Below are positions 14,090-52,331 of a DNA stretch of 64,000 bases, piece by piece. The notes beneath the pieces are model-generated. The model saw only the letters and a list, made by a program, of their open reading frames with translations. It ran no database searches and was not told the DNA's origin. The position numbers and the translations under genes are program-made. The first letter of the stretch is position 1. Each line of letters starts with the position of its first letter. This DNA is from Isurus oxyrinchus (lineage: Eukaryota), in assembly GCA_026770705.1 (NCBI GenBank), contig JANJGN010000021.1:98890001-98954000 (forward strand). The letters are read 5' to 3'.

Positions 14090-14419
14090 ATTGATTCGCA
14101 ACAATCATTTTATTCTGCTTCAACAGCCCACACCTGGAGTCTGTAGAATGGAAACATTTCTGATCTCACAGAATCACATAATACAGCCCCACAAGCATGG
14201 GGATTGTACACAGTCTGCTAAATACACCAGGTATTGTTCCCTCTGTATCCCATTCAAAGGAGGGGGGATGGAGATGGACAATAGCACTCTCCCTATTTTA
14301 GGCTTTCAGCATTAGCTTCAAGCTAATGGGCAGTTAGAGCATAGTTAGCCACAGAGTAAAGCTTCCAGTTCTCGCTGAGGAAGTGGAGTTGAATGCAGGC
14401 TCCACAGAGTCTTCAGAGC
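14090..14419 (-). other. Candidate distal terminal (3'UTR) exon of gene A
   Basis: Polypyrimidine tract plus CAG acceptor (ccctctctgtcttgtcag) at 14420, and AATAAA on the minus strand at 14109-14114. Confidence 0.35.
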
Positions 14420-15111
14420 CTGACAAGACAGAGAGGGTGAATTTCAACGTTTCAGCATGGTCTGAATTGGAGCCCAGATCCCAGAGGTGAAGAGTCAGTC
14501 TTGAGCATGCTGTATATCACACTTGTACCGACCCATCAATTGATCCCCAGCAGCTGAACACACACAGCAGCCCCTCAGTCAGGTGTATGAATGCCTTAAG
14601 TAAAGGTCATAGCAGTGACCCTCTACCTGCACTCGCTCCAGCCTGACCGGTGAGACCCTTCCCCATGTTAAACCCTCACAGAGCTAACTCAGCATATGGC
14701 AATAGGGCCTTTGTAATCCCACAGGATGACCTGCTTTCGCTACATGCTTTAACATCAAGGAATTAAAAACCATCACACAGGACGTTTCAAAATAAAGATT
14801 CAAAATATCTATCATTTCCAGTTAAAATAAATCCAGGGATTGAGAGAGTTTGCAAATGCCGCAGAGGTGATTAACCTTCTGTTGAACCGACCTGAAGCAA
14901 ACCTTTTTCACCGAGTATTTCCAGGATTTTTCTGTTTCCATTTCAGATATCCAGCACCTACAATAAATTGTTTCTATATTGATTACACTACTGTCCATGC
15001 TTGTTAACAGTAGTCTATGAATTAAAGAGTTTGTATATCGCTGAGAATAGAGACAGGCCGTCACAGCTTCTCACCCTGCACTTTCCCTTTCGATCTGGTA
15101 ATCTTGCAAGT

Positions 15112-15147
15112 CTGTCCTGATGAGTGCAAGTCGAAAAGCTTAGACAG
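15112..15147 (+). ncRNA. Minimal type I hammerhead ribozyme motif (Penelope-like element relic)
   Basis: CTGTC-CTGATGA-GTGCAAGTC-GAAA-AGCT-TA-GACAG: stem I CTGTC/GACAG, intact CUGAUGA and GAAA cores, palindromic AAGCTT stem III. Confidence 0.7.
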
Positions 15148-16123
15148 CTTGTCTCTTTTCTCAGCAATAATCAAGCTCTGTTCTACTCAGCGACTAATGG
15201 TTTGCATATCCCTCCATGGTGAATTATTCTGGTGTTGCCCACTGGCGGGTGCTCTGATTGGTGAAATCTGCGCCACCCGATTGGATGAATGGTTGTCCCA
15301 GTATCCAGGGGCTACCGGTCACATTTTGAATGAAATGTACAGTGCGGCGCGGCTCTCCCCTCCCCTAGCCTGCCAGGGGTTTCTATTATAGTTTATGGTG
15401 TCGGAACACAACAGCTCCCTCACTATCCAAGCTCGGCATCTCGCATTCTTACCGTGGGGGCAAGGCACTGCCAGCTGCCCAGTGACATTCTCTGTCCTGT
15501 CAACATGCTTAGGCCCAACCCTCCACGGCACTGGTCGGACATTTTGTTTCATTTCTTGGGAGAGGCTTGGAATTAGACTGAGGACAGGCTCTAACCTATC
15601 TCCTATAAGCAATGAATGGTGCTCCAGAGCGTTTGAATGGGATTTTGGGATCCCTGGGGTTCAAAGGTGAAGGTGCTGATCGGTAAGTCAGGGTTCAAAG
15701 GGCAAGACACTGCACAGGACCCAGGGTTCAAAGGTCAAGGGCAGTGTGTGGAACCCAAGTTCAGAATGGAAGTTGACAAAACATTGAAAAGTCAGTTAGA
15801 AAAAACAAAATGAGGCAATGCAAATCGGCAAAAGGTCCATCTCCGAGCAGTTATTATGTTAGAGGCAACGGTGAAGCTGTTCAGTCATTCGTCAGTAGAA
15901 CAGAGAGAGAGAGTCTCCATCTGGGCAGTTGGTGAGACTCTTGGATTGGTTGAGAGATTAAAGTTTGCCTGGGAAGGAGAAACAGGAGGAGGTTAGAGTT
16001 GGAACATTGCCGCTCGATAACCTGTCATTTGCTTTTATTTGATGAACAAGACGTGAGACCGGGATTCCCATCTTTACTCACCTGTGCTTATACCTTATCC
16101 TCCATCTTAACTGCTCTGGGTCC

Positions 16124-16203
16124 CTAGATCACTCTTCCCATAATTGCCAGCAAGAGGCCGAGGACTGGGCCAGAATGAATGGTCTCACTCACCCCTTCGA
16201 CAC
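16124..16203 (-). CDS. Candidate last coding exon of MHC class I-like gene A (short hydrophobic C-terminus, stop at 16124-16126)
   Basis: Acceptor tgttctttccctggtgtgcag. In phase 1 it reads (G)VEGVSETIHSGPVLGLLLAIMGRVI*. Donor CAG|GTGAGT at 16082/16081 and AATAAA at 16034-16039. No better TM exon was found downstream of alpha3. Confidence 0.5.
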
Positions 16204-17189
16204 CTGCACACCAGGGAAAGAACACACAGGACGTTAAGGGGCGGGGACAGTGAAAGACAAGGAGCTGACTGCCCAAGCCCACTTCAACGCCCACTAACTA
16301 ACGGCTCTGATAATGGGGGCACTCCCCCACAACCCCAACAAACCCCCCACCCCCAAACCCAGCCCCCTCCCCACCACCACCCCCCACCACCCTACCAAAC
16401 AGCAATGGCCCAACTGTGAAACCACTCACCTTTCGACTTCTGCATCAATGGGTTTTGACAGGCAGCCAACAGCCCCCATTCCACACCCTGCCTGACATTT
16501 CCTTTCCATTGGCTTTGAGCGGGTGGAGCGCAGGCTCCCTATTCACTCGCCACTTCCTGAGTGACTGCACAACGTCAGGATCCTCCCCAGAGAGCTCGAG
16601 AGTGGCCCATCTTGGATTGCCCACCAGTTCCCAGTGGGCGCCAACTTCAAGCGGAGTAATCCCGTGGGCTTGCTGTAGGAAATGGGGTTCTGCTGAATAC
16701 CCGGTTAACGACTGTGTGACCCTTGCTACCATCCCAGATCCTCGACATATCCACACCATGAGACACCATGAGCAGAATTTTCACCAAACCAACTTGTTCA
16801 CCTTGGGCTGCCGGGGTGGGGGTTGGCGGGATTGAAGGGGTGGCAGCGGGTTAGATTGTGAGAGAAGAGTGCTTTGCCATTGCTGTTTAACTCAGCCAGG
16901 TTTCCTCACTCATCATGGTATGTGACCCGCAGCCATTAATGGTAGGGGTCAGAGGCTCAGAATGGTTGTGTCTGCGTTTGGTCCTGGGGCCTCAGCACAA
17001 GCACAAGGAAGGAAACATGACTCGGGAAGGCTGCTCCCCTTGGCTCTCACACTCTTCCAGAGCTCCTACTTTACAATATAATGGCTGGGAGAGAAGGATT
17101 GTGTCAACAGCCGGGACAAAGGGGCCAGCGTCTCAGAATAAGCATGGTGGAAGTGGCAGGAGTGTGGCCTCTGGAGTCAGTGTCTTATC

Positions 17190-18190
17190 AAGTACATTTC
17201 TGACTGGCAGGATGTGACAAGTGGAGTCCTGCAGGGTACATGCCGGTGCCTCAACTTTTTTACAATTTATATCAACCACTTCAATGAAGGCAGTGAATGC
17301 ATGGTAGCTAAATTTGCAGATGACACAAAGATAGGCAAGGAAGTATGTTATGAAGAGGACATATGGAGTTTTCGGATGGATATGTGTAGGTTGAGTGAGA
17401 GGGCAAAAATTTGGCAGATGGAGTTTAATGTGAGAAAACGTGAAGTTGTTCACTTTGGCAGGAAAAATAAGAAAAGCAGGGTATTACTTAGACGGAGAAT
17501 GACTGCATAATTCTGAGGTGCAGAGGGATCTAGGTGTTCTAGTGCATGCTAGAACAAAAAGGTGGCATGCAGGTACAGCAAGTAATTAAGAAGGCTAATG
17601 GAAGGCTATCTTTTATTACAAAAGAATTGACCATAAAAATGAGGATGGTATGCTTCAGTTACACAGGACATTGTTGAGACCACATCTCAAATACTGGGTG
17701 TGATTTTGGTCTCCATATTTAAGGAAGGATGTAAATGTGTTAGAAGTGGATTAGAGAAAGTTTACCAGATTGATACCTGGAATGAGTGGGTTGAATTATG
17801 AGGAACGGTTAGACAGACTGAGGGGTGACTTGGTTGAAGTATACAAGACCATGAATGGTTTTGACAAGGTGATCATTGGAAGGATGTTTTCTTTAGTGGG
17901 TGAGTCCAAAACTAGGGGGCGCTGTTTTAAAATTAGCGGTTGCCCTTTTAGGTCAAACATTAGGAGAATTATTTTTCTCTCAGTGGATTTGTGTGACTTT
18001 GAAACTCTCTGCCTTAGAAGGTGATGGAGGCAGGATCACTAAATATTATTAAGGCAGAGGTAGGTGGATTCTTGTTAGGCAAGGGAATCAAAGGTTATCG
18101 AGCTCAATGGGAATGTGGAATTCGAAATGCAAACAGAATGGCGGAGCAGGCTCAAGGGGCCATATGTTCTATTTCAGCTTCTATTTTGTA
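17190..18190 (+). mobile_element. CR1 LINE 3' ~1 kb, degenerate
   Basis: TSGVLQG...IYIN...KFADDTKIG...WQMEFNV.K.EV.HFG, then EERL..LRGDLVEVYK. Confidence 0.9.
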
Positions 18191-18507
18191 TGATAAGGTG
18201 TGTTAATGTCAATTACATTGCTGAGGTTAAGAGAAAAGGTGATGGGTATTAATTGTCCTCAAGCACATATAAATAAGGGATCCTTCCACAACTGGTGGGC
18301 ACTTTGGAGGCTGGAGTGCATCGCCAAGCCCAGTGACATCATGTTAATTTGATTTTGTTAGTTTCTGTTGAAGTTTTCATTTTTGTTACAGTGCCCCACC
18401 AGGAGCCATCACCCCTGTCATTAGTTTTGTTTATTGATCATTTGTTTTATTTTAAAAGAACATATAAATGGGAGGAGAAGAGTGAGACTAAACAAGTCAA
18501 TAAACTC

Positions 18508-19166
18508 AAAACAAAAACAGAATTACCTAGAAAAACTCAGCAGGTCTGGCAGCATCGGTGGAGAATAATAAAGTTGACGTTTCGAATCCTCATGACCCTT
18601 CAACAGAACTGAGTAAAATAAGGGAGGGGTAAAATATAAGCTGGTTTAAGGTGGTGGGGGGGGGGGGGGGGTGGTGTGGGGGTGGGGGAGAGAAGTGGGT
18701 GGGGGAGGTTGGTTGTAGGGACAAGCAAGCAGTGATAGGAGCAGATAATCAAAAGATGTCACAGACAAAAGAACAAAGAAGTGTTGAAGGTGTTGAAGAA
18801 TGTACTAATATCACCACCTTCAACACCTCTTTGTTCTTTTGTCTGTGACATCTTTTGATTATCTGCTCCTATCACTGCTTGCTTGTCCCTACAACCACCC
18901 CCCCAACTTCTCTCCCCCCACCCAACACCCGCACCACGCCTCCCCCCCACCACCCTGCACGCCCCCCCCCCCCCCCCCCCCCACCCACAACCTTAAACCA
19001 GCTTATATTTCACCCCTCTCTTAATTTTACTCAGTTCTGTTGAAGGGTCATGAGGACTTGAAACGTCAACTTTATTATTCTCCACCGATGCTGCCAGACC
19101 TGCTGAGTTTTTCCAGGTAATTCTGTTTTTGTTTTGGATTTCCAGCATCTGCAGTTTTTTGTTTTT
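18508..19166. mobile_element. Palindromic Penelope-like element: two inverted ~300-bp arms with a 14-bp TSD
   Basis: 18508-~18795 is the reverse complement of ~18812-19136. Flanking direct repeat AAGTCAATAAACTC at 18494-18507 and 19167-19180. Hammerhead-like motifs at 18572-18610 (-) and 19033-19071 (+). Confidence 0.8.
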
Positions 19167-19999
19167 AAGTCAATAAACTCTCTCAATAAAGAAAAACTCT
19201 GTGTCTTGGTTTCTGCTTCACCAACTGGCTTGGATCCTGTTAACACCTCAAACCTGGAGACAGTGCCGCAAAAGAGTTCAATGACCTTACGGGAATAGTA
19301 AAGCTGTGAGGCCCGCCAATTTCAGGTGTCACCCAGCACACCCTGACCTCCCCAACATTCTCCCTCACAGCAAATTCATCATCCTCAAGTGTGTGTCCAA
19401 CGTCCTTTTAAAATTATGTAATCATCTTCCACCGCCTTTTCAAGCATAGCATTTGAAATCCCAGAATCTCTTCTCCTCTCTGGATCATTGACCAATGATT
19501 GTAAATCTATAACTTCTAGTTCTTGACCTGTCACCAGAGGAAATAGGTTTTCTCCATCCACTCTAAGACCTTTCCTCATCTGGAAAATCTCGACGGTGTC
19601 ATTGTATGCGTCGGCCTGTGAAGCCTCAAGAAATCCCCCCAAAAATGGGGTCAGTTTTTACACTGAGTGTGAAAGTAAACAGCAGGCATAGGTATGTGTG
19701 GCTGCCATCTTTGTTGTGGACATAGGGGTTTGCTCTATGTGAGCATGTCTTAAACTCCCACGCACCTTCGCAACACAGTCTGGGTCACCTATTTGATCCC
19801 TTGCATCCAATTATAAGGTACCAGTAAATAAAACATGCATTTGTGGGGTGAAAAATTGAGGCTGACTACTAATGTGAGTATAGCATGTTGTGGCTGAAAA
19901 GGGTGGGTCAAGTATTTGTCAAAGTATGATTTTTAAAGTGGAAGAAATGAAGTCACCTTAGTCACCAGGTCGACTTATATGCTGCGATCTATGGTAGCT

Positions 20000-21200
20000 C
20001 TTAACCTTCGTTGTTCCAAGGAAAGCAGTCCTAACATTTCAAACTTCTTTTCATAACTGAAGTCCCTCTTCCTTCATAAACCTCCTCATGTAGCTTTCTA
20101 AGGCCTTTACATCTTTCCTAAAGTGTGGCACCCAGAGTTGTCCACAATGCCCACCTGAGGCTGAACCATTGGTTTATGAAGTTCTATATGCAATGCCTCG
20201 ATTTTATATTCTGTGCCTCTACTTATAAATGGAGGTAACCCATCTGCTTTTATAACCACATTATCAACATAAGAGCCTAATAAATAGGAGCAGGACTGGA
20301 CCACATGTCCCATCCAGCCTGCTCCGCCATCCAATACAATTATGGTTGACCTTGGGCTTCAGCTCCATTTTCCCAACCAGTCCCCATATCCCTTCGTATC
20401 CTGAGAGACTAAAAATCTGTCTATCTCACCCTTAAATGTGTTCAACGATGGGGCATCCACAAGCTTCTGGGGTAGAGAATTTTAAACATTCACAACCCTT
20501 TGCATGAAGAAATTTCACCTCATCTCAGTCCTAAATGATCCGCCCCTTATCTTGGGACAGTTTAACTTGTAGTGCCACTTTTTTAAAAGGTTTGAGTACA
20601 TGGACACCAGACTTTCACTTTTCAAAATGGTGCCATTTAAGTATACTATTTTTTTCTATTTTAGTCCTCCAAAAGTGCATTGTTTTACACTTCTCCACGT
20701 TAAACTCCATTTGCCACGTTTCTACTCTTTTCACCATCCCGTCTCTGTCACCCTGAAGCCTATAACTAGCCTCATCACCATCCACTGCTTTGCTAAGTTT
20801 TTGAGCATCTGCAAAGTTTATAATGCTGCTCCCTACTCTTGAGACTGGTTTGTTGATATAACAAGCGAAAAGATCAATGGACCCAAAACCGGCCCATGTG
20901 GAAATCCACTGCAAACCACCTCTCAGACTGAAGCACCTCCACCACCCACACTTTGCTTCCTGTCGCTGAGCCAATTTTGCATGCATGCTGCTTACTTTCC
21001 CCTTACTTCCACGGGCTTCCTTTTTTTCCAAAGCCTCCCATATGGCACTTCGTTGAATGCCTTCTGAAAGTCCATTTGTACATCAACTGATCCACTACCT
21101 CAATCAAACTTCTCTTCCAACCTCCAGGAATTCAATTGAGTTAATCACAAATAATTCCCCTTTATCGAACCTGTGCTGGCTTTTCTTAAGTGACCCATGT
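20000..21200 (-). mobile_element. Nested CR1 fragments
   Basis: The minus ORF contains INFAD..KL...LQGD.D.MV...WQMEFNVEKCK.MHF. A second CR1 3' end is inserted at ~20270-20550. Confidence 0.8.
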
Positions 21201-21711
21201 CTTTAAAGTTGAACAATTGAACTCCCCAGGCTGGTGAGTGATAGTTGGACCCCCGACCTTGCCATGATTGACATGTTTATAGTTTAATTCCAGTTACTGT
21301 CCAATTTGATGCTGGTCAACCTGTATAGTTTAACCTCCCCTCATACTTCCATTTGTTTCACCAAACTCTCTTTCCCTCAAGTTTCTCTCTATTTCAGTTT
21401 CCATTGGCAATGAGAGTCGGTAACCAGAGCACACAGATTTAATCTAAGCAGTAAAAGAGCCAGAGGAGAGATGAGGACATTTTGTTTTGATACAGTGAGC
21501 TGTTGTGACCAGCACTGCCAAAACAGGCAGAGGATGCAGTAATAAATGTTAAGAAGGAATTAGATGTATTTTTAGGGGATGAATTTCCAAGGCAGTGGGG
21601 CAGTGAACTTGGAGGAAACGTGCCTGACTGGATTGCTCTCCCAAAGACCTGTCACAGGCACGATGGACCAAATAGCCGCCTTTGGCGCTTTATCATTCTG
21701 TGCTGACTTAC

Positions 21712-21984
21712 CCGACTGCACTGTCAGTGTCTTGGGCAGGCTGCTATGTTGAACTTTACAGAAGTAGCTCTTTGGGTTATTGTCCTCAATGTCTATGAGG
21801 ATCTCCATTCTGTATGTTGCATTGTAGTTTGGCAGAACGGTCACTGTAAGGGCATCCAATACAGGCTCTCCATTCCGCAGCCAGGTGGCATTGATAGCAC
21901 GGGGATAGAAGGCAGTGACAAGACAAAGGAGAGATGTGGAGCCATCAGTGGACGTCTTACTGAAAACCAGCACCTCAGGGGCAA
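21712..21984 (-). CDS. Gene A exon 4: MHC class I alpha3 (C1-set Ig) domain
   Basis: ttcttcag acceptor, G|GTAAGT donor, 273 nt, phase 1-1. (V)APEVLVF...LLCLVTAFYPRAINATWLRNG...LPNYNATY...YFCKVQHSSL. Confidence 0.93.
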
Positions 21985-22044
21985 CTGAAGAAAAAGGAAG
22001 AAGTAAAGACACTATCTCTAGAAACTTAATTTGACATTCATCCA

Positions 22045-22910
22045 ACAGAACACACTCAGAATCTGAATCCAGGTCACACTCAGAATCTGAATCCAGGCCA
22101 CACTCAGAATCTGAATCCAGGCCACACTCAGAATCTGAATCCAGATCACACTCAGAGTCTGAATCCAGGTCACACTCAGAATCTGACTCCAGATAATGCT
22201 CTGAATCCAGATCCAGATCACACTCAGAATCTGAATCCAGATCATTCTCAGAATAAGAATCTAGATCACGCTCAGAATCTAGATCCATATCACACTCAGA
22301 GAATCTAGATCCAGATCATTCTCAGAATAAGAAAGTAAATCGCACTCAGAATCTGGATCCATATCACTCAGAGAATTTAGATCCAGATCATACTCATCAC
22401 CCAGATCCAGATCACACTCAGAATCAGAATCCACATCATTCTCAGAATAAGAATCTAGATCACAGTCAGAATCCAGATCCACTTCACACTCAGAGAATCT
22501 AGACCCAGATCATACTCATCACCCAGATCTAGATCACATTGAGAATCTGGATCCATGTCACACTCAGAATCTGGAACCATATCACATTGAGAATTCAGGC
22601 CTAGGTCACACCCAGAATCTAGATCCAGATCATGCTCGTCACTGAGATCCAGATCACATTGCGAATTTGGATCCAGATCACATCGATAAACGGAATCCAG
22701 AACACACTCAGAATCTAGATCCAGCTCAAACTCATCACCCAGATTCAGATCACAATGAGAATTTGGTTCCAGATCACACTGAGAATCTGGATCCAGGACA
22801 CACTCAGAATCAAAATCCAGATCACACTCAGAATCCAGATCCACATCACACTTAGAACCCAAATCCAGATTACACTCAGAATCCGGATCCAGATCACATT
22901 GAGAATCCAA
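22045..22910. repeat. 24-bp minisatellite (CCAGATCACACTCAGAATCTGGAT) filling intron 3 of gene A
   Basis: Direct tandem units, which give the DLDSDSEC-type ORFs. Confidence 0.92.
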
Positions 22911-22928
22911 TTGTACAGTACAACTTGC

Positions 22929-23204
22929 CTTTTCTTTCCAGGGCTGCTTTACCAGCTTGAAGATTTGACTGAAGATTTCGGACACAGTTGGTGTTCAGTT
23001 TCTGGACCAAAGCGATATTTTGGTTGAGGATGCTTTCAAATTCTTTATTCAGTAAAGCTAATAAACCTATTCCACTGCAACGCACGGTGGTTATTTCACA
23101 TTGAATCACTCCATAAATATTTTTCATCTTTACAAGGCCGTTCTTGTTGGCATTCTTGTCGTTTTCTGGCACACAGCTCCAGATCCCCAGTACGTATGTG
23201 ATAT
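22929..23204 (-). CDS. Gene A exon 3: divergent MHC class I alpha2 domain
   Basis: tttgcag acceptor, 276 nt, phase 1-1, open. (H)ITYVLGIWSC...IQCEITTVRC...ILNQNIALVQKLNTNCVRNLQSNLQAGKAALERK, with C101/C164-equivalent cysteines. Donor is AAG|GCAAGT. Confidence 0.85.
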
Positions 23205-23599
23205 CTGCAAATGATCAACAGGTAAACCAGGCATTAATGGAAGAACTCTCCATGCACCTCTCTGTTAGGTCGAGCCCCCTTGAGCACCTGTAATGCCTGA
23301 CTGAGTAAATGTATGGTGTACGTTAATGTAAATATAAGTGTGACAATGTACAGAGTGGGAGGTCCTGATGAGGGGCTGTGGTCCGTGAGTGCCCTCTTTC
23401 TCTAGTTTCTCTTCTGTTTCCCCACCTGCTCTCCCTGAGCTCATCTTGTCCATGAGACCCACCTGCACCTTCACTTGCTGCTTATGTTGTTTGGCATGCA
23501 AGTAGTCCTGTGTTATTGCTTCACTAGGTTGACACCTCATTTTTAGGCAAGCCTGATGCTGCTCCTGGCATGCTGTGCTGCACTCTTCTTCGAACCATT

Positions 23600-24325
23600 G
23601 ACACCATCACTCTTCCTGGCAATAGTTTGAGGCTAAGCCAGAATGTTCGCAACCTTGGTGCAATATTTGACCTGGAGATGAGCTTCCAATCAGATATCCT
23701 TGCATCATTAAGTCTGTCTATTTCCACCTCTGTAAGATTGCCCTGTCTCAGCTCATCTGCTTCTAGAGCCCACATCCTTGTTACCTCTAGCCTTGACTAT
23801 TTCAATGCTCTCCTACATTCTACCCTCCATAACATTGAGGTCATTAAAGACTCTGCTGCCAACGTCCTAACTCATACCAAGCACTGACCCCCTTTCACCC
23901 CTGTGCTCGCTGATCTACATTGGCTCCTGGTCAAGCAATGTCTTGATTTTAAAATTCTCATCCTTGTTTTTAAATCCCTCCATGGCCTTGCCCATTCCTC
24001 TCTCTATAATCTCCTCCAATCCACAACCCTCTGAGATAGATATCTGCATTCTATTCATTATGGTCTTTTGAGCATCCTGAACTTCAATTGCTCCACTATT
24101 GGTGGTTGTGCTTTAGTCCTCAAGCTCTGGAATCCCCTCCCCAACTTTCCGCACCTCTCTACCTCACTTCCCTCCTTTAGGATTCTTCTTAAAAACTACC
24201 TCTTTGATTAGACTTTGGACATCCATCCTAATATCTTATATGGCTTGCTGTCAAATTTTATTCGATGAGGACCATGGGACATTTTACCATTCTAAAGGCC
24301 CTATGTACATGCAAGTTGCTCTTGT
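23600..24325 (+). mobile_element. L2-clade LINE 3' fragment
   Basis: RNLG..FD...LVTS.LDY.NALL...TPVL..LHWL motifs and a tail ending ATGCAAGTTG. Confidence 0.75.
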
Positions 24326-24467
24326 CCTCCTTTTCCCCTTTTTAATTCTGTAACTGGAGAGGTGAGGAAGCTGTCCTCAATGTCTCCAGTGGGAAGCCTT
24401 TGACTTAATGGTGTCAACACAGTTCTATTTTAACCTATAGGGACAGGAAAGATCAAGTGAATCTCAC

Positions 24468-24716
24468 GAAAGCTGTTGAGGAATGGACTAAGGCTGCTGA
24501 CGAGAATCATGTGAAGAGCGTTTGCGGTCCTGGTCTGCTCCTGCCAGTAGTCATCTGCAAAACTGTCAGCCATCCACTGCTGCCTGGGCTCAGCCTTTCT
24601 CAGGGAGCTGTCGTAGTACTGTGTCGGTAGGTCATCCAACATTCCGACCACCGAGAATTCCGGCACGCCAGGGAGGTCCTTGTAGTAGATGAAGAGTTGC
24701 TGAAAGGTGTGGAAGT
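24468..24716 (-). CDS. Gene A exon 2: MHC class I alpha1 domain
   Basis: ttccctcag acceptor, C|GTGAGA donor, 249 nt, phase 1-1. (D)FHTFQQLFIYYKDLPGVPEFSVVGMLDD....YYDS...AEPRQQWM...DYWQEQTR. Confidence 0.9.
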
Positions 24717-24824
24717 CTGAGGGAAAGTCACAGAGAAGAAGCGTGAGCAAGGGGCTGACACAAAACCCTAGATCAGAACGCCAACTCCCTTTGTCTCCTC
24801 GCCTTCAGGAGACGGGCAGGACAT

Positions 24825-25320
24825 AAACACATGAGCAATAGGAACAGGAAGAGACCAAATGGCCTGTTGAGCCTGCTCCACCACCCAATACAATCTTGGC
24901 TAATCCTTGGCCTCATCCCCACCTTCCTGCACACTCCCCATAACCCTTGATTTCCCGAGAAATCAGAAATCTGTTTATCCCAGCCTTAAATGTATTCAAC
25001 AATGGAGCATGCATACCCTCTGGGATAGAGAACTCTAAAGAGTCATAACTTTTTGAGTGAAGAAATTTCTCCTCAGATCAGCCCTAAATGATCATCCCCT
25101 TATCCTGAGACTGTCATCCTGTGTTTTAGACTCCCCATCTGGGGAAACAGCCTCTCAGCATCAACCCTGTCAAATCCCTTCAGAATTTGCATGTTTCATC
25201 TCTCATTCTTCTAAACTCCAGAGATATCAGCCAAATTTACTCAGCCTCTCATCATAGCCCAGCCCTCTCTTCCTGGGGACCAAACAGGTAAACATTTACT
25301 CTGCCAATGCAAGTATGTTT
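24825..25320 (-). mobile_element. CR1 3' fragment
   Basis: Same family as 9085-9525 and 20270-20550. Confidence 0.75.
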
Positions 25321-25393
25321 TTTATTGAGATCAAAACAGCTCTCAAGATTCCAGGTGTGCTCTCAGCAAAGCCCTCTCCAAATGTAGCAAGAG

Positions 25394-27612
25394 TGCGGCA
25401 GGTGGTGAGGGAACCAACAAGAGGGAAAAGCATATCTGAACTCACCTTCACCAACATGCCTACCACAGATGCATCTTTTCATGACAGTATTGCTCACAGT
25501 GACTAACACAGAGTCCTTGTGGAGGCGAAATCCCATCTTCACATTGAGGATACCCTCCATCATGTTGTGTGGCACTACCATCGGGCGAAATGGGATAGAT
25601 TTCAAACAGATCTAACAACTCAAGATTGGGCACCCATGAGGCACTGTGGGCCATCAGCAGCAGCAGGATTGCACTCGAACAACATCTGTAACCTCATTGC
25701 CCAGCATATCCCTTGCTCTACAATTATCACCAAGCCAGGGGATCAGCCCTGGATCAATGAAAAGTGCAGGAGGGCATGCCAGAACCAGGCATACCTAAAA
25801 ATGAGGTGTCAACCTGGTGAAGCTATAACACAGGACTACTTGTGTGCCAAACAGCATAAGCAGCAAGTGATAGACAGAGCTCAGCTATTCTGCAACCAAC
25901 AGATCAGATCTAAGTTCTGCAGTCCTGCCACATCAAGTCATGAATGCTGGTGGACAATTAAACAACTCACTGGAGGAGGCGGCTCCACAAATATCCCCAT
26001 CCTCAATGATGGAGGAGCCCAGCACATCAGTGCAAAAGATAAGGCTGAAGCATTTGCTACAATCTTCAGCCAGAAGATTGAACCATCTCAGCCTCTTCCG
26101 GAGGTCCCTAGCATCACAGATGCCAGTCTTCAACCATTTCAATTCACTCCATGTGATATCAAGAAATGGCTGAAGGCACTGGATACTGCACAGGCTATGG
26201 GCCCTGACAAGATTCCGGCAATAGTACTGAAGACTTGTGCTCCAGAATTTGCTGTGCCCCTAGCCAAGCTGTTTCAGTACAGCTACAACACTGGCATCTA
26301 CCCGGTGATGTGGAAAATTGCTCAGCTATGTCCTGTACACAAAAAGCAGGACAAACTCAGCCCGGCCAATTACTGTCCCATCAGTCTACTCTCCATCATC
26401 AGAAAAGTGATGGAAGGGGTCAACAGTGCTATCAAGTAGCACTTGCTTAGCGATAACCTGCTCATTCATGCCCAGTTTGGGTTCCACCAAGGCCTCTCAG
26501 CTCTTGACCTCATTGTAGCCTTGGTTCAAACATGGGCAAAAGAGCTGAACTCCCGAAGTGAGGTGAGAGTGACTGCCCTTGACGTCGAGGCAGCATTTGA
26601 CCGAGTGTAGCACCAAGGAGCCCGAGCAAAACTGGAGTCAATGGGAATCAGGGGGGAAACTCTTTACGGAGTTGGAGTCATACCTCCTTGTTGGAGGTCA
26701 ATCATCTCAGTTCCAGGACATGACTGCAGGAATTCCTCAGGGCTGTGTCCTTGGCCCAACCATTTTCGGCTAAAACAGTCCATGTCCAAATGCAGCAAGG
26801 CCTGGACAATATCCAGGTTTGGGCTGACAAGTGGCAAGTAACATTCGCACCACACATGTGCCAGGCAATGACCATCTCCAACAAGAGAGAATCTAACCAT
26901 CACCTCCTTGACATTCAATGGTATTACTCTCACTGAATCCCCCACTATCAACATCCTGGGGGTTACCATTGAACAGAAACAGAATTGGACTGGCCATATA
27001 AATATTGTGGCTATAAGAGCAGAGCAAGTCAGAGGCTAAGAATCCTGCAGCAAGTAACTCACCTCCTGACTCCCCAAAGCCTGTCCTCCATCTACAAGGC
27101 ACAAGTAAGGAGTGTGATGGAACACTCCCCAATTGCCTCGATGAGTGCAGCTCCCACAACATTCAAGAAGCTTGACACCATCCAGGACAAAGCAGCCTGG
27201 TTGATTGGCACCCCATCCACAAACATTCACTCCCTCCACTATTGATGCACAGTAGCAGCAGTGTGTACCATTTACAAGATGCACTGCAGGAATTCACCAA
27301 GGCTCCTTCGACATCCACGACCATTACCAACTAGAAGGACAAGGACAGCAGATAGATGGGAACACCATCACCTAGAAGTTCCCCTCCAAGTCACTCACCA
27401 TCCTGACTTGGAAATATATTACTGTTCCTTCACTGTCGCTGGGACAGAATCCTGGAACTCCCTCCTTAACAGCACTGTGGGTGTACCTACACCACATGGA
27501 CTGCAGGGGCTCAAGAAGGCAGCTCACCACCACTTTCTCAAGGACAACTAGAGATGGGCAATAAATGCTGGCCCAACCAACGACGTCCTCATCTCACGAA
27601 TGAATTAAAAAA
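25394..27612 (+). mobile_element. 5'-truncated, degenerate CR1-group LINE (HER1-like; shares its 3' tail with the HE1-like SINE)
   Basis: ORF 25519..26439 contains AMGPDKIP..VLK.CA...PL..LFQ.S...G.YP..WKIA...PVHKK...PANY.PISLLS (N-terminal RT). It has in-frame stops, a deletion over the YADD region near 26770, and an A-tail at ~27607-27613. Confidence 0.9.
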
Positions 27613-28271
27613 AGGACTCCTTTATTCTTGTGCCCCAATCACCTTGCAGTCAGAAGCCTGGCATGGTTCCCGATCCAACTATTACCCAGGAGAGGACTAG
27701 TTGAAGTGCGGACCAGGGAAGCTGAGGGCAGGATGGGGCTGGGCTCTGATGCCCCCTGACAGTGGAACAGTGGGCACAGCAGCCTCTCCAGACCATTGAG
27801 GCAGCTTGGCCCAGGACAAACTTGAGCACAAGGCTTGCAGGCAGCTACAGAAATGCACAGGGGAACTAGGCAGCCACAGTGAGGCTCCAGGCATGTCTGA
27901 ATTGAAAGAGCTAAAACTGGAGGGGAGACAGGAATTGGACTGGACGTTGCCTTCAAGCCAAAGGGTGCTGGGGGTGGTTGGGGGTGGGGTCGGGGGGGGG
28001 AGAGTTTGGCAGTGGTGCGAATGTGGGGTGGGATGGGGTGGCAGGAACTGGTGGGGAAATTGCCTAACCTAGACCCAAGACCTGAAAGATGCCAAACTGG
28101 AACTGAGCTGGGCAGAGGAAGTTTGGTTTTCTCACTTCCCCATCGGCGGTCATAGCAATCTACAGCGGGCCAAAATTTGATCATCACCTGATGAAGGAGC
28201 TGAGCTGAGCACAGCAACTTCATTTAACATCTTGAAGTAATGGGGAAGGCAGAATGTAACATGCCCAAGAA

Positions 28272-28548
28272 CAGCTGCTACTGTGTGTCGGTGGTGGAGG
28301 GAGGGAATGTTTGTGGATGTGGTGCCAATCAAATGGGCAACTTTGTCCTGGATGGTATCAAGCTTCTTGAATGTTATGGGAGCTGCACTCATCCAGGCAA
28401 GTGGGGAGTATTCCATCACACTCCTTACTTGTGCCTTGTAGATGGTGGACAGGCTTTGAGGAGTCAGGAGGTGAGTTACTTGCTGCAGGATTCCTAGCCT
28501 CTGATCTGCTCTGCTCTTACAGCCACAGTATTTATATGGCCAGTCCAA
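28272..28548 (-). mobile_element. Inverted copy of LINE segment 26985-27262
   Basis: Reverse complement aligns to 26985-27262 (DWPYKYCG.KSRA.QRL.ILQQVTHLL in both ORFs). Confidence 0.85.
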
Positions 28549-29090
28549 GCACTCCCTCAGCACTGTCCCTCTGACAGTACACCACTCCCTCAGTTATGAC
28601 CCTCTTATAATGCAGCACTGCCTCAGTACTGACCCTCTGGCAGTGCAAAACTCCCTCAGTACTGACCCTCTGAGAATGCAGCACTCCTTCATTTATGACC
28701 CTCTTACAGTGCAGCACTCCCTCAATACTGACCCTCTGACTGTGCACCACTCCCTCGGTACTGACCCTCTGACAGTGCAGCACTCCCTCACCGCTGAACC
28801 TCTGACAGTGCAGCACTCCCTCGGTACTGACCCTCTGACAGTGCAGCACTCCTTCACCGCTGACCCTCACAGTGCAGCACTCCCTCAGCACAGACCCTCT
28901 TACAGTACAGCACTCCCTCAGTACTGACCCTCTAACCGTGTACCACTCCCTCGGTACTGACCCTCTGACAGTGCAGCATTCCCTCAGCGCTGACCCTCTG
29001 ACAGTGCAGCAATTCCTCAGACTGGCCCTCTGACAGTGCAGCACTTCCTCAGTACTGACCCTCTGACAGTGCAGCACTGCCTCAGCACTG
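28549..29090 (-). repeat. 30-bp SINE-derived minisatellite in intron 1 of gene A
   Basis: Reverse complement of the unit at 12905-13750. Confidence 0.9.
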
Positions 29091-29169
29091 ACTGGCACCC
29101 TGGGATCAGTGCCCATACTCGGCACCACCTCACTGCCATTCAGTTCTCCCCAGCAACTCCTACCCTTAC

Positions 29170-29227
29170 CTGCTTGGACGCCGATTGCAGTGCATAGGGA
29201 CAGCAGGGTGAATCTCAGCCCCGTCAT
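29170..29227 (-). CDS. Gene A exon 1: signal peptide
   Basis: MTGLRFTLLSLCTAIGVQA followed by G|GTAAGG (phase 1), joining alpha1 as VQA-DFHT. In-frame upstream ATGs are possible (MPGMEDWNRH). Confidence 0.85.
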
Positions 29228-29525
29228 GTGTCTGTTCCAATCCTCCATCCCGGGCATCAGGAGGAGCACGAGTCCTGGGAGTGACAAGCAGGGCAGCAGT
29301 GCCTGGAGCTGATTAACACTGCACTCTGGCGCGGGACCCTACAGGTGTCGCCTTTTGGGTCTCTCACTCAGCCCCAGTGTGTCTGACAGTCCGAGCAAGA
29401 CGCTTGGCTCCGCAAGTGCCACCCACCCACCCAGTCCAACAGGGGATTAAGTCCGGTGTGCACCAGCCCAGGGGAAGGACAGCTCAGAATGAACTCCCAA
29501 CGTGCGAGAACTCACACTCTGCTCA

Positions 29526-29569
29526 GAAATATCCCCAGTTCTCTGACTTCCCCAATGGAAGTTACGTCA
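29526..29569 (-). promoter_or_regulatory. Candidate gene A promoter motifs: CRE/X2-like TGACGTAA, inverted CCAAT (Y-like ATTGG), kB-like GGGGATATTTC
   Basis: Clustered within 44 bp, ~300 bp upstream of the ATG. Confidence 0.4.
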
Positions 29570-30060
29570 GTCCCGAGTATGTCAACAGGAGGAACATCTG
29601 GGCCACTCTTCTGAACAGTGCCAAGGGCAGCTGCTTCCTGAAATGTTTTGCAAAAACGCCGAAGGCAGGTTGCAGCGCGTCCTTTGCAGTGGAAAGATCA
29701 GAATGGCTCAGCTTTTCCCAAGTTATGATGCCCAGAGCCTCCCTCCCCCCGGTCACCACACCCGGCACTTGGCAGGGTGCACAGCGCCAGGCTGAAGCAC
29801 CCTACGGCTCTGGCTCTTTCACATCTTTTTTACCCTCCCAATCTTTTTCCACTGCGCCACACCACAATACATATATTTTTAAAGGCTTACAAAGAACCAA
29901 TTCAGGAAATGCTAATAGCTGCATTTCTATTGTTGCGCTAAAAAGCCAATCGTTATTCTGCACCTTACAGTTTTTAAAATTATTGTAATAAAAAGCATCA
30001 TCATGCTCTCAGTAAACCTGTTGGAGTGGTACTGCTTGCACCGCGGTTAGACTTCCACAG

Positions 30061-42078: not shown

Positions 42079-42353
42079 CCCAGGGTCTCTCCATTGCTCC
42101 AGAAAGCTGCTGTGTAGGACGCGACAGACATGGTTGCGGCTATCTCCGGGTTTAGTCTGGAAGTGCACCCTGATTTGGTAGGTGCCGTCATGGTTGGGTC
42201 GAATGCCGGTGCTTTGGGATTTGAAGAGGGGCTCTCCGTCTGTATACCAGATTACGTTGATGGATTGCGGGTAAAAACCAGTGACCAGGCAGTGGAGATT
42301 GAGATTCTGGCCATCCAAGCTCTTTGTGTCATAGACAATCAACTCTGGGACAA
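42079..42353 (-). CDS. Gene B alpha3 (C1-set Ig) exon, 275 nt (1-nt deletion near the 3' end)
   Basis: (V)VPELIVY...LHCLVTGFYPQSINVIW...G...IRPNHDGTYQI...VCRVLHSS. Restoring one base gives SSLSGAMERPW plus a phase 1 junction. Confidence 0.88.
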
Positions 42354-42784
42354 CTGAAGAGAGAGAGAGAGAGAAAGGAGGACAGGTTCACTCTGACTGT
42401 ACACGGCAGTGGAACCCTTCGACTGGATTAGTCACAGATGGAAAGGGACGTGGTAAGTGACTATGAAATGAAGAGGATGGTCTCACAGATCAGTCTGTGT
42501 GACAGCCTCCCTCACGCGCTGTGCTCTCGGTGAATCAGTGAATTCACCATCGGAGCCTCCTGCCGTCCTCAGCTGCAGCCTCTCCCTGCTGAGGCCCTGG
42601 CCGCAGTTTACTGGGTTCAAACCTGACCGGCTTCGGGACAGCTCTGGGGATTTCCGGTAAAACAACACTCCCCCTCGAAGATGCGGCACAGCCAGGTTCA
42701 AACTGGAATAACAGGAAAGGTGGAACCAGGATTCAGAGGAAGTGTGTGTGTGTGTGTGTGGGCAGGGTGTGGGGGCGGTCACGA

Positions 42785-45052
42785 GGACAGAGTGGGAGGG
42801 GCTGGGGAGGGGTCACCAGGGAGTGGGTGGGAGGGGCTGGGGAGGGGTCACCGGGGAGATAGCGGGAGGGGCTGGGGAGGGGTCACCGGGGAGAGAGCGG
42901 GAGGGGTCACCGGGGAGAGAGCGGGAGGGGTCACCGGGGAGAGAGCAGGAGGGGCTGAGGGGTGGGGTCACCGGGGAGAAAGCGGGAGGGGCTGGAGAGG
43001 GATCACTGGGGGGAGAGCGGGAGGGGCTGGGGAGTTCACCGGGGAGAGAGTGGGAGGGGCTGGGGCAGGGTCACCTGGGAGAGAGCAGGAGGGACTGAGG
43101 TGGTCACCGGGGAGATAGTGGGGGGTGGGTCACCAGGGAGAGTAGGGGGTGGGTCACCGGGGAGAGAGTGGGGGGTGGGTACTGGGGAGAGAGTGGGGGG
43201 TGGGTCACCGGGGAGAGATTGGGAGGGAGGGTCACCGGGGAGAGATTGGGAGGGAGGGTCACCGGGGAGAGATTGGGAGGGAGGGTCACCGGGGAGAGAT
43301 TGGGAGGGAGGGTCACCGGGGAGAGATTGGGAGGGAGGGTCACCGGGGAGAGATTGGGAGGGAGGGAGGGGGTCACCGGGGGAGATTGGGAGGGAGGGAG
43401 GGGGTCTCCGGGGAGAGATTGGGAGGGAGGGAGGGGGTCTCCGGGGAGAGAGTGGGAGGGAGGGGGGGTCGAGAGTGGGAGGGGCTGGGGTGGTCACCGG
43501 GGAGAGAGCGGGAGGGGGCTTGGGGTGGTCTCCGGGGAGAAAGCGGGAGGGGGGGGGTCACCGGGGAGAGAGTGGGGGGGGGTGGTTCACTGGGGAGAGA
43601 GTGGGAGGGGCTGGCAGGGATGCGTCACTGGGGAGAGAATGAGGTGTTCATTGGGAAAGAGACTGTGGTGGTCACTGGGGAGAGCGCGGGAGGGGTCACC
43701 GGGGAGAGAGCAGGAGGGGCTGAGGGGTGGGGTCACCGGGGAGAAAGCGGGGAGGGGCTGGAGAGGGATCACTGGGGGGAGAGCGGGAGGGGCTGGGGAG
43801 TTCACCGGGGAGAGAGTGGGAGGGGCTGGGGCAGGGTCACCGGGGAGAGAGCAGGAGGGACTGAGGTGGTCACCGGGGAGATAGTGGGGGGTGGGTCACC
43901 AGGAAGAGTAGGGGGTGGGTCACCGGGGAGAGAGTGGGGGGGTGGGTCACCGGGGAGAGATTGGGAGGGAGGAGGGGGTCACCGGGGAGAGATTGGGAGG
44001 GAGGGAGGGGGTCACCGGGGAGAGATTGGGAGGGAGGGAGGGAGGGGGTCACCGGGGAGGAGATTGGGGAGGGAGGGAGGGGAGGGGGGTCACCGGGGAG
44101 AGATTGGGAGGGAGGGAGGGAGGGGGTCACCGGGGGAGAGATTGGGAGGGGAGGGAGGGGGTCACCGGGGAGAGATTGGGAGGGAGGGAGGGGGTCACCG
44201 GGGAGAGATTGGGAGGGAGGGAGGGGGGGGTCACCGGGGAGAGATTGGGAGGGAGGGAGGGGGTCACCGGGGAGAGATTGGGAGGGAGGGAGGGGGTCAC
44301 CGGGGGAGAGATTGGGAGGGAGGGAGGGGGGTCACCGGGGGAGAGATTGGGAGGGAGGGAGGGGGTCACCGGGGAGAGATTGGGAGGGGAGGGAGGGGGT
44401 CTCCGGGGAGAGATTGGGAGGGAGGGAGGGGGTCTCCGGGGACAGAGTGGGAGGGAGGGGGGTCGAGAGTGGGAGGGGCTGGGTGGTCACCGGGAGAGAG
44501 TGGGAGGGGCTTGGGGTGTCTCCAGGGAGAAAGCGGGAGGGGGGGTCACCGGGGAGAGAGTGGGGGGGTGGTTCACTGGGGAGAGAGTGGGAGGGGCTGG
44601 CCAGGGATGCGTCACTGGGGAGAGAATGAGGTGTGTTCATTGGAAAGAGACTGTGGTGGTCACTGGGGAGAGAGTGGGGGTGTCACTGGGGAGAGAGTGG
44701 GGGTGTCACTGGGGAGAGAGTGGGGGTGTCACTGGGGGAGAGAGTGGGGGTGTCACTTGGGGAGAGAGTGGGGGTGTCACTGGGGAGAGAGTGGGGTGTC
44801 ACTGGGGAGAGAGTGGGGGTGTCACTGGGGAGAGAGTGGGGGTGTCACTGGGGAGAGAGTGGGGGTGTCACTGGGGAGAGAGTGGGGGGTGTCACTGGGG
44901 AGAGAGTGGGGGTGTCACTGGGGAGAGAGTGGGGGTGTCACTGGGGAGAGAGTGGGGGTGTCACTGGGGAGAGAGTGGGGGTGTCACTGGGGAGAGAGTG
45001 GGGGTGTCACTGGGGAGAGAGTGGGGGTGTCACTGGGGAGAGAGTGGGGGGT
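42785..45052. repeat. G-rich minisatellites (GGGTCACCGGGGAGAGATTGGGAGGGA; GGGGGTGTCACTGGGGAGAGAGT) filling the gene B alpha2-alpha3 intron
   Basis: Visible directly, with an internal ~0.8-1 kb duplication (about 42900-43680 vs 43680-44670). Confidence 0.95.
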
Positions 45053-45109
45053 GCCATTGGCCAGTGGTTTGATGGATGCTTGTGACAGGAGGTTTGGAGT
45101 CAGACCTAC

Positions 45110-52325: not shown

Positions 52326-52331
52326 ACTAAC

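What the first reader, a model, noticed from the sequence alone, without database searches (positions are those of the whole stretch)
16124..29227. CD1-like, probably non-peptide-binding MHC class I gene in a cartilaginous-fish locus
Seen: leader, alpha1 (249 nt), alpha2 (276 nt) and alpha3 (273 nt) splice in phase 1 with no stops, so the ectodomain is intact. By manual alignment to HLA numbering, only Y59 of the peptide-anchoring set is kept. Y7 is Q, there is no R/Y84, and T143, K146, W147, Y159, W167 and Y171 are all replaced. Both helices are hydrophobic (ANALHMILVSSLSPFL; GLLALLNKEFESIL). Established: CD1 grooves are hydrophobic, and human CD1a alpha2 ends VLNQN...C...LLDAGKAHLQRQVKP; here it reads ILNQN...C...NLQAGKAALERKVAP. 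Inference: a lipid or small-hydrophobic-ligand presenting class I molecule in a lineage where true CD1 is not classically recognised. It may belong to an already named shark nonclassical lineage, which I cannot check.
Basis: partly seen in the sequence, partly recalled or inferred. Interest (0 to 1): 0.85.

Follow-up and report, generated by a model that had tools for sequence, protein, structure and literature searches.

The report
Shark UFA, a lipid-type MHC-I
This is an intact, transcribed shark copy of UFA, a nonclassical MHC class I gene that specialists have already named and crystallised and describe as CD1-like (lipid-binding).

Summary
A five-exon MHC class I gene lies on the minus strand: leader, alpha1 249 nt, alpha2 276 nt, alpha3 273 nt and a short tail exon. 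All junctions are phase 1 and there are no stops.

RNA-type contigs from the same species splice alpha1-alpha2-alpha3 exactly at the predicted junctions with no mismatches. One junction uses a GC-AG intron. A DNA run lacks these joints.

Each exon's best solved-structure match is PDB 8GM8, "shark nonclassical MHC class I, UFA". The alpha2 exon matches nothing else in the PDB. Per-domain trees place the gene with white shark and basking shark, inside a one-gene-per-species shark clade that holds nurse-shark UFA. Rays form the sister clade.

Published texts call UFA CD1-like and lipid-binding, as unpublished data or personal communication.

By sequence, UFA is no closer to CD1 than to ordinary class I. 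The likeness is in groove chemistry, not shown orthology.

Two smaller points may be new:
- Every family member ends in a GPI-signal-like hydrophobic tail with no cytoplasmic domain.
- Alpha2 shows 9 replacement to 1 silent change against white shark.

The scan held no earlier UFA finding on other DNA.

The parts
29170..29257 (-). Exon 1, coding part: signal peptide MPGMEDWNRHMTGLRFTLLSLCTAIGVQA plus the first base of the next codon. In-frame ATGs at 29257, 29248 and 29227. Donor gtaagg follows 29170.
   Evidence: White shark P0006 starts at the ATG equivalent to 29257 and basking shark P0001 at the second ATG. The RNA contig overlaps by 3 nt (CAG) at the alpha1 5' end, which fits the end of this exon.
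24468..24716 (-). alpha1 exon, 249 nt, phase 1.
   Evidence: Pfam MHC_I 1.2e-7. 8GM8 5.7e-22. RNA contigs cover it with 0 mismatches.
22929..23204 (-). alpha2 exon, 276 nt, phase 1. It has four cysteines: the canonical pair plus a family-specific pair.
   Evidence: 8GM8 is its only PDB hit, at 8.4e-17. Only 5 hits below E 1e-3 among 1.84 billion representatives. RNA joints fall exactly at both ends.
22927..22928 (-). Non-canonical GC splice donor of intron 3 (AAAG|GCAAGT).
   Evidence: Sequence. The joint 22929|21984 skips 944 nt with ends CT..GC on the plus strand, in three RNA-type runs of two species.
21712..21984 (-). alpha3 exon, 273 nt, phase 1: an Ig C1-set domain.
   Evidence: C1-set 1.7e-14. 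8GM8 1.1e-35.
16124..16203 (-). Last coding exon, (G)VEGVSETIHSGPVLGLLLAIMGRVI plus TAG. The short hydrophobic C-terminus has no cytoplasmic residues and looks like a GPI-attachment signal.
   Evidence: It is identical to the C-terminus of white shark P0006 and the same tail type occurs in nearly all 23 aligned relatives. All isoforms share it. The 2-nt (GT) overlap of the RNA contig at the alpha3 3' end fits the start of this exon.
14109..16123 (-). Probable 3' UTR of about 2 kb, ending after AATAAA at 14114-14109. This part is inferred, not shown.
   Evidence: The RNA contigs carry 1954 and 1982 nt beyond alpha3. The AATAAA was read.
22046..22907 (.). 24-nt minisatellite, about 36 copies, that fills intron 3.

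Best explanation
This is the UFA gene of a lamnid shark closely related to the white shark. UFA is a single-copy, MHC-linked nonclassical class I (class Ib) lineage of sharks and rays.

Shown here:
- The gene is intact and is spliced into mRNA.
- It is orthologous to nurse-shark UFA, whose crystal structure is PDB 8GM8.
- It has lost the residues that clamp peptide ends in classical class I.
- Its two groove helices are markedly more hydrophobic than those of the ordinary class I gene next to it.

Inferred:
- The heavy chain pairs with beta-2-microglobulin through its C1-set alpha3 domain.
- It holds a lipid or other hydrophobic ligand in a closed, greasy groove.
- It displays that ligand at the cell surface to T cells, possibly innate-like ones.
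- It sits in the membrane by a GPI anchor rather than a transmembrane helix. It would then lack the tyrosine-based endosomal sorting tail that most CD1 isoforms use, so loading would occur in the secretory pathway or at the surface.

It works like CD1, but it is not demonstrably a CD1 orthologue.
For: - Exon structure and open frame.
- Exact spliced contigs with 0 mismatches in two RNA-type runs of the same organism, and in a white shark run. The joints are absent from the DNA run.
- 8GM8 is the best hit for alpha1 (5.7e-22), alpha2 (8.4e-17, the only hit) and alpha3 (1.1e-35).
- The entry titles name UFA (8GM8) and UGA (9CH4).
- 25 relatives occur in sharks and rays, one per shark species. 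The nearest is white shark XP_041069088.1, at 97.6, 90.1 and 97.8 % identity in alpha1, alpha2 and alpha3.
- Per-domain trees give window + Carcharodon + Cetorhinus inside a shark clade that holds nurse-shark UFA, with SH-aLRT support of 98 for alpha1 and 97 for alpha2. The alpha3 tree does not resolve that shark clade.
- Helix hydropathy is 0.05 and -0.06, against -0.98 and -1.16 in the neighbouring class I gene. The alpha1 helix has 2 charged residues against 9.
- Literature on CD1-likeness and lipid binding: PMC10751288 and PMC12562908.
- The tail is conserved across the family and across isoforms.
Against: - Lipid binding, beta-2-microglobulin pairing, surface display, T-cell recognition and GPI anchoring were not tested here. 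The lipid claim rests on a solved orthologue that is only 43-68 % identical, and on statements cited as unpublished data or personal communication.
- By sequence the family is not nearer to CD1 than to classical class I, MR1 or ZAG. The alpha2 exon finds no CD1 anywhere.
- By fold, everything class I-like ties at Z of about 19 below UFA.
- The AlphaFold model, made from the white shark orthologue, is only of middling confidence (pLDDT 70.6). I could not measure groove volume.
- The alpha2 domain shows 9 replacement to 1 silent difference against white shark. This could mean relaxed constraint on this lineage rather than adaptation.
Confidence: 0.8

Rival explanations
1. It binds a hydrophobic ligand but is not an antigen-presenting molecule. 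The lipid would be a structural filler or cargo. The protein would act as a ligand for NK-type or other innate receptors, or in lipid handling, as EPCR, ZAG or the GPI-anchored stress ligands of mammals do.
For: - The GPI-like tail resembles those of mammalian stress ligands and of Qa-2 rather than CD1 (the comparison is from general knowledge).
- ZAG ranks high in the profile search.
- No T-cell data are cited in the accessible literature.
- Most of the fast alpha2 changes lie outside the predicted helices.
Against: - The alpha3 domain is a well conserved C1-set domain like that of beta-2-microglobulin-bound presenters.
- The groove helices and the disulfide are conserved from sharks to rays.
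- Specialists who hold the structure and the mass spectra compare it to CD1d.
Confidence: 0.14
2. It is a true orthologue of tetrapod CD1. [quoted passage not shown] The alternative is an independent lineage that converged on lipid binding.
For: - This reading is suggested in PMC10751288 and PMC12562908.
- 5 of 23 family members touch Pfam MHC_I_3, the CD1 family, with best E 1.6e-5.
- NCBI's pipeline named two ray members CD1d-like and CD1c-like.
Against: - The window's own exons give no MHC_I_3 hit at E<=10.
- The alpha2 exon finds no CD1 in the PDB or among 1.84 billion representatives.
- In the family profile search, chicken CD1-1 (4.8e-31) and CD1c (6.5e-31) rank below MR1, ZAG, classical class I of several vertebrate classes and HLA-A2, and level with shark UAA.
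- The tail architecture differs from CD1.
- The cited authors themselves call orthology 'challenging to assess'.
Confidence: 0.2
3. It is a peptide-binding nonclassical class I gene, or a recently decaying copy of one.
For: - pN/pS in alpha2 against white shark is 2.5 and cannot be told from neutrality (P = 0.33 under omega = 1).
- Nurse shark and many ray members keep Y7.
Against: - The frame is open in about 20 species that span the shark-ray split, and the gene tree follows the species tree.
- It is transcribed and correctly spliced.
- alpha1 and alpha3 have pN/pS of 0.24 and 0.32.
- Positions 84, 143, 146, 147, 159, 167 and 171 are all non-canonical.
- The orthologue's deposited structure is filed as nonclassical UFA.
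Confidence: 0.03

Closest known systems
Nurse shark (Ginglymostoma cirratum) UFA, PDB 8GM8 (released 2024-11-27); lineage named in Verissimo et al. 2023, PMC10751288
   Same: - Best hit of all three ectodomain exons.
- Same domain lengths and the same four alpha2 cysteines.
- Same GMLDDL, YWQEQ, AGKxALERKV and FYPRxINATW motifs.
- Same shark clade in the alpha1 and alpha2 trees.
   Different: - Identity is only 50 % in alpha1, 43 % in alpha2 and 68 % in alpha3.
- Position 7 is Q here and Y in nurse shark.
- The PDB construct stops before the tail, so it says nothing on the anchor.
White shark XP_041069088.1 and basking shark orthologues, auto-named 'MHC class I-related gene protein-like'
   Same: - Same five-exon product.
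- White shark has the identical tail, and basking shark the same tail with three changes.
- 97.6, 90.1 and 97.8 % identity for white shark and 88.9, 82.4 and 90.0 % for basking shark.
   Different: There are 9 amino-acid changes in alpha2 against white shark, 7 of them derived on this species' branch. None of these records is annotated as UFA.
Shark UGA, PDB 9CH4 (released 2026-03-18)
   Same: It is the second CD1-like single-copy class Ib lineage. It is the second-best PDB match to alpha1 (3.1e-11) and to the family profile (3.9e-51).
   Different: The alpha2 exon does not detect it at all. Identity to the model is about 28 %. It is a separate lineage.
CD1 (tetrapod lipid-presenting class I-like molecules)
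   Same: - Hydrophobic groove.
- Loss of the peptide-end anchors.
- Reported lipid ligands.
- A beta-2-microglobulin-type alpha3 domain.
   Different: - No specific sequence affinity.
- UFA is MHC-linked in elasmobranchs.
- The C-terminus is a short hydrophobic GPI-like signal. From general knowledge, CD1 has a transmembrane helix plus a cytoplasmic sorting tail.
Chicken YF1*7.1 and mouse Qa-2
   Same: YF1 is an MHC-type class I molecule that presents lipids or lipopeptides and ties for the next-best fold match (Z 19.6). Qa-2 is, from general knowledge, a GPI-anchored class Ib molecule.
   Different: Both derive recently from classical class I of their own lineages and keep most anchor residues. 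UFA is an old, separate lineage shared by sharks and rays.

Membership tests
UFA (elasmobranch nonclassical class I lineage) | Closest similarity in alpha1, alpha2 and alpha3 to the reference nurse-shark UFA rather than to UGA, UAA or other class I | tested here: met
   8GM8 is the top hit for all three exons and the only hit for alpha2. The family profile scores 8GM8 at 1.6e-124 against 3.9e-51 for UGA.
UFA (elasmobranch nonclassical class I lineage) | Falls inside the clade that holds reference UFA, with the gene tree following the species tree (orthology) | tested here: met
   In the per-domain trees the window groups with Carcharodon, then with Cetorhinus in the alpha1 and alpha2 trees. 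Those two trees put it within a 10-row shark clade that includes P0013 (identified with the 8GM8 sequence by its 265-aa length and source name), with support 98 for alpha1 and 97 for alpha2. The alpha3 tree does not resolve that shark clade or the Cetorhinus grouping. Rays form a separate supported clade in the alpha2 and alpha3 trees only (97). Other shark lineages (UBA, UDA, UEA, UGA) were not in the tree, because no tool gave me their sequences.
UFA (elasmobranch nonclassical class I lineage) | Family sequence signature: extra cysteine pair in alpha2, GMLDDL, FYPRAINATW and a short hydrophobic C-terminus | tested here: met
   All are present in the window's exons. They are invariant or nearly invariant in the 23-sequence alignment.
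UFA (elasmobranch nonclassical class I lineage) | Single or low copy, and mapped in the MHC class Ib cluster with UDA and UEA | tested here: inconclusive
   There is one copy in the window, with an ordinary-type class I gene 13-23 kb upstream on the same strand. Unchecked scan notes report a class Ib cluster just beyond the window.
UFA (elasmobranch nonclassical class I lineage) | Binds lipids in a hydrophobic groove | not testable with these tools
   Only indirect evidence: hydrophobic helices and literature statements on the orthologue.
CD1 | Detectable homology of alpha1-alpha2 to the CD1 family (Pfam MHC_I_3) above other class I families | tested here: not met
   No MHC_I_3 hit for the window's exons at E<=10. 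5 of 23 relatives hit it weakly, against 22 for MHC_I. CD1 ranks below MR1, ZAG and classical class I in the profile search. The alpha2 exon finds no CD1.
CD1 | Type I transmembrane anchor with a cytoplasmic tail (a tyrosine sorting motif in most isoforms) | tested here: not met
   The product ends ...SGPVLGLLLAIMGRVI* with no residues after the hydrophobic run. The same holds in all relatives and isoforms seen.
CD1 | Hydrophobic, lipid-binding groove | not testable with these tools
   Consistent, but not measured.
Classical peptide-presenting MHC class I | Conserved peptide-terminus anchors Y7, Y59, Y/R84, T143, K146, W147, Y159 and Y171 | tested here: not met
   Only Y59 is kept. The others are Q, S, N, F, E, K and N under ungapped alignment anchored on the conserved Cys and YW.

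The most novel reading that the evidence does not exclude
UFA is a GPI-anchored lipid-presenting class I molecule. Every shark and ray member, including this one, ends in a 13-16-residue hydrophobic tail preceded by small residues, with no cytoplasmic domain. It would therefore have no cytoplasmic tail for CD1-style endosomal sorting and would sample lipids by another route. In addition, its alpha2 domain has undergone a burst of amino-acid replacement on this lamnid's branch: 7 derived changes, and pN/pS of 2.5 against about 0.3 in alpha1 and alpha3. That would point to species-specific adaptation of ligand or receptor contacts. I found neither point in the accessible literature, but the primary UFA paper, if one exists, was not in the library.
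Probability: 0.45. Interest if true: 0.45.

Novelty: new member of a known kind. Interest (0 to 1): 0.3.

Why it matters
[quoted passage not shown] This locus adds a verified, expressed lamnid orthologue with exact exon coordinates, including an uncommon GC-AG intron.

Comparison of about 20 species shows which features are constant: the four alpha2 cysteines, the hydrophobic helices and the GPI-like tail. It also shows which vary: position 7 and the alpha2 sheet and loops.

The likely GPI anchor is a concrete mechanistic difference from CD1 that experimenters can test. For the scan, the result shows that a reader working from raw sequence reached the specialists' conclusion. The lineage itself is already named and crystallised, so the discovery value is modest.

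Tried and rejected
- **Joined protein.** The fold was made on the white shark orthologue P0006 instead, so no structure of this species' protein was predicted.
- **The look-up of encoding contigs.** I obtained no orthologous shark DNA, no synteny and no proper codon-model dN/dS. The N/S counts come from the white shark RNA contig laid on the window. One of its 10 alpha2 differences was not listed, and I took it as silent because the proteins differ at only 9 sites.
- **CD1 affinity by sequence.** Pfam on the exons, PDB at E<=10, 1.84 billion representatives and a family profile against the PDB gave no specific link.
- **CD1 affinity by fold.** In Foldseek and VIA-align, UFA stands out at Z 23.6. 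UGA, YF1, TL, FcRn, HLA and chicken CD1-1 all tie at Z 18.9-19.8, so the fold cannot discriminate.
I could not verify it. The AGKxxLERK part is common to the class I family (alignments).
- **Primary UFA paper.** Searches by PDB codes and by names found none. PMC8454915 is not held.
- **Gene B as UGA.** My guess that the neighbouring gene was UGA was wrong. Its best matches are ordinary class I.
- **Pseudogene or processed copy.** Rejected, because the introns are present in DNA and are removed only in the RNA-type contigs.


Full report
**What is in the sequence**

The finding lies on the minus strand. Reading 21500-24900, 28900-29700 and 15900-16500 and translating each exon by reference gives a five-exon gene.

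- Exon 1 ends at 29170 (donor gtaagg) and encodes MPGMEDWNRHMTGLRFTLLSLCTAIGVQA. In-frame ATGs lie at 29257, 29248 and 29227.
- alpha1 is 24716-24468, 249 nt.
- alpha2 is 23204-22929, 276 nt.
- alpha3 is 21984-21712, 273 nt.
- The last coding exon is 16203-16124, (G)VEGVSETIHSGPVLGLLLAIMGRVI followed by TAG.

All junctions are phase 1 and there are no stops. Intron 3 has a GC donor in the strong context AAAG|GCAAGT, and no GT donor nearby keeps the frame. Pfam sees MHC_I in alpha1 (1.2e-7), C1-set in alpha3 (1.7e-14) and nothing in alpha2.

Every search was made exon by exon by reference, and the joined-protein steps were left out.

**It is expressed and spliced as predicted**

The one run search found DNA runs holding 96-97 % of the sampled words of 21700-24720. 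It also found two small RNA-type runs of the same organism holding 27-28 %. That share is about the exonic fraction of the stretch, 798 of 3021 bases.

When laid on 21650-24760, each of those two runs gives one contig, of 3123 and 3149 nt. Each contig covers alpha3, alpha2 and alpha1 with 0 mismatches. Each jumps exactly 22929|21984 (944 nt skipped, GC..AG on the gene's strand) and 24468|23204 (1263 nt skipped, GT..AG). The DNA run shows neither joint, so this is splicing and not a processed copy.

The contig pieces overrun alpha1 by 3 nt (CAG) and alpha3 by 2 nt (GT). Those are the last bases of the leader exon and the first bases of the tail exon, so the two outer junctions are supported indirectly.

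The contigs carry about 1950-1980 nt beyond alpha3. An AATAAA sits at 14114-14109. This suggests an unspliced 3' UTR of about 2 kb, but that is inferred.

**What it is**

Each exon's best match among solved structures is 8gm8_A: alpha1 5.7e-22, alpha2 8.4e-17 and alpha3 1.1e-35. For alpha2 it is the only match at E<=10. Foldseek returns the entry title 'Crystal structure of shark nonclassical MHC CLASS I, UFA' (released 2024-11-27). It titles 9CH4, the second-best alpha1 match, 'shark nonclassical MHC CLASS I, UGA'.

Searching the alpha2 exon against 1.84 billion representative proteins gives only five hits below E 1e-3. Three are full-length elasmobranch class I proteins, and none is a CD1.

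A full-length search from the basking shark hit gives 25 relatives:
- Sharks: Carcharodon, Cetorhinus, Mustelus, Pristiophorus, Heterodontus, Chiloscyllium, Scyliorhinus, Heptranchias and Ginglymostoma. The Ginglymostoma hit is a 265-aa 'MHC class I protein', which by its length and source name I take to be the 8GM8 sequence.
- Rays: Pristis, Hemitrygon, Amblyraja, Mobula and Narcine.

There is one gene per shark species and several per ray species. The nearest relative is white shark XP_041069088.1, at 97.6, 90.1 and 97.8 % identity in alpha1, alpha2 and alpha3.

The differences carried by the second organism's RNA contig reproduce that white shark protein residue for residue. So the second organism is the white shark, and the window comes from a very close lamnid relative, which I cannot name.

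All three per-domain trees put the window with Carcharodon. The alpha1 and alpha2 trees add Cetorhinus next and place the group inside a shark clade that contains nurse-shark UFA, with SH-aLRT of 98 and 97. The alpha3 tree resolves neither. Rays form a separate supported clade in the alpha2 and alpha3 trees (97). This is orthology to UFA.

**What is known about UFA**

Verissimo et al. [quoted passage not shown] They map it in the class Ib cluster with UDA and UEA.

[quoted passage not shown] I found no primary paper in the library.

I anchored on the conserved YW motif, on Cys101 and Cys164, and on the exon ends.

The helices are hydrophobic. Mean Kyte-Doolittle hydropathy is 0.05 for alpha1 and -0.06 for alpha2. 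In the ordinary class I gene that lies in the same window the values are -0.98 and -1.16. The alpha1 helix has 2 charged residues against 9. The alpha2 helix is similarly greasy across the whole family.

Position 7 is not a family trait: nurse shark and most rays keep Y7.

**Is it CD1?**

It works like CD1 according to the literature, but membership fails where I could test it.
- The exons give no hit to Pfam's CD1 family at E<=10. Only 5 of 23 relatives touch that family weakly, against 22 for MHC_I.
- A family profile ranks UFA, UGA, then classical class I of several vertebrates, MR1, ZAG and HLA-A2. Chicken CD1-1 and CD1c come lower, level with shark UAA.
- By fold, UFA stands at Z 23.6. 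UGA, YF1, TL, FcRn, HLA and chicken CD1-1 all tie at about 19. The model is of the white shark orthologue and has pLDDT 70.6.

Its AGKxxLERK part is shared with class I in general.

**The tail**

I confirm the sequence basis.

The product stops right after a 13-15-residue hydrophobic run, preceded by small residues (G-V-S ... S-G-P). This tail is identical in white shark. The same architecture ends 20 of the 23 aligned relatives; the nurse-shark PDB construct stops before it, and two records (Scyliorhinus, partial, and one Narcine isoform) end differently. It also ends every extra NCBI isoform I pulled, including Narcine isoform X1; those isoforms differ elsewhere in the chain and keep the same tail.

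A run that short, with no cytoplasmic residues, is too short for a normal transmembrane helix and fits a GPI-attachment signal. This is inference. I had no GPI predictor and no experiment, and I found no paper mentioning it. If true, UFA lacks the cytoplasmic sorting tail that most CD1 isoforms use.

**Uneven evolution**

Against white shark, the exons differ as follows:

| Domain | Replacement : silent | pN/pS |
|---|---|---|
| alpha1 | 2 : 2 | 0.24 |
| alpha2 | 9 : 1 | 2.48 |
| alpha3 | 2 : 2 | 0.32 |

- With basking shark as outgroup, 7 of the 9 alpha2 replacements are derived on the window's branch (branch 0.091 against 0.018).
- Eight of them lie in the sheet and loops, at alpha2 residues 4, 12, 13, 15, 21, 29, 32 and 40. 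One lies on the helix, just after Cys164.
- Nine of ten being replacements is unlikely if alpha2 evolved at omega = 0.3 (P = 0.015). It is compatible with neutrality (P = 0.33). The contrast with alpha1 plus alpha3 is not significant (Fisher P = 0.12).
- The sequence itself is not an assembly error. RNA contigs filed under a different sample and study match it exactly.

**Verdict**

The gene is a new species' copy of a known, named and crystallised lineage, not a new kind.

The scan held no earlier UFA note. Unchecked notes report another hydrophobic-groove class I gene 333 kb upstream, and a class Ib cluster just past the window's end. Both would fit the published class Ib cluster.

Noticed in passing
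window 42103-52617, minus strand: A second class I gene ('gene B') lies upstream of the UFA gene on the same strand. Its alpha1 is at about 52545-52408 (ORF 52327-52617), alpha2 in ORF 45030-45452, and alpha3 at about 42348-42103. Its best PDB matches are ordinary class I: lizard 7CPO at 2.8e-22 for alpha2 and shark UAA 6LUP at 1.3e-12 for alpha1. It matches neither UFA nor UGA best, so it is probably a UDA- or UEA-type class Ib gene. I did not check leader or tail exons, intactness or expression.
   Followed up: partly
window 43000-52300: The introns of gene B are filled with long tandem repeats that read as endless ORFs on both strands, for example GEIGREG... and CSPLHTPCEPGSLSNTRV... units. 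The GC skew is strong in 42-46 kb and 52-60 kb.
   Followed up: no
window 22046-22907 and 28548-29092: Intron 3 of the UFA gene is almost wholly a 24-nt minisatellite of about 36 copies, which reads as DSECDLD repeats. Intron 1 holds a 33-nt repeat of 16.6 copies.
   Followed up: partly
window 25363-25605, minus strand (inside intron 1): This ORF (MKSIPFRPMVVPHNMMEGILNVKMGFRLHKDS...) matches the alternative N-terminus of white shark 'isoform X1' (P0028). That isoform has no signal peptide. It looks like a repeat-derived first exon or an annotation artefact.
   Followed up: partly
window 17200-18000, 20600-21030, 25500-27250 and 28150-28560: Reverse-transcriptase-like and other repeat-element ORF fragments fill introns 1 and 4. 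Parts of intron 2 (23420-24040) have very high depth in all runs, that is, a high-copy repeat.
   Followed up: no
window 53902-54034, 56478-56717 and 57849-58010: Three runs of N.
   Followed up: no
same genome, 333 kb before the window and 1 kb beyond its end (scan notes s1-864211 and s1-870904): Unchecked first-reader notes report another hydrophobic-groove class I gene with extra cysteines, which could be UGA. They also report an alternating-orientation cluster of nonclassical class I genes, which could be the UEA cluster.
   Followed up: no
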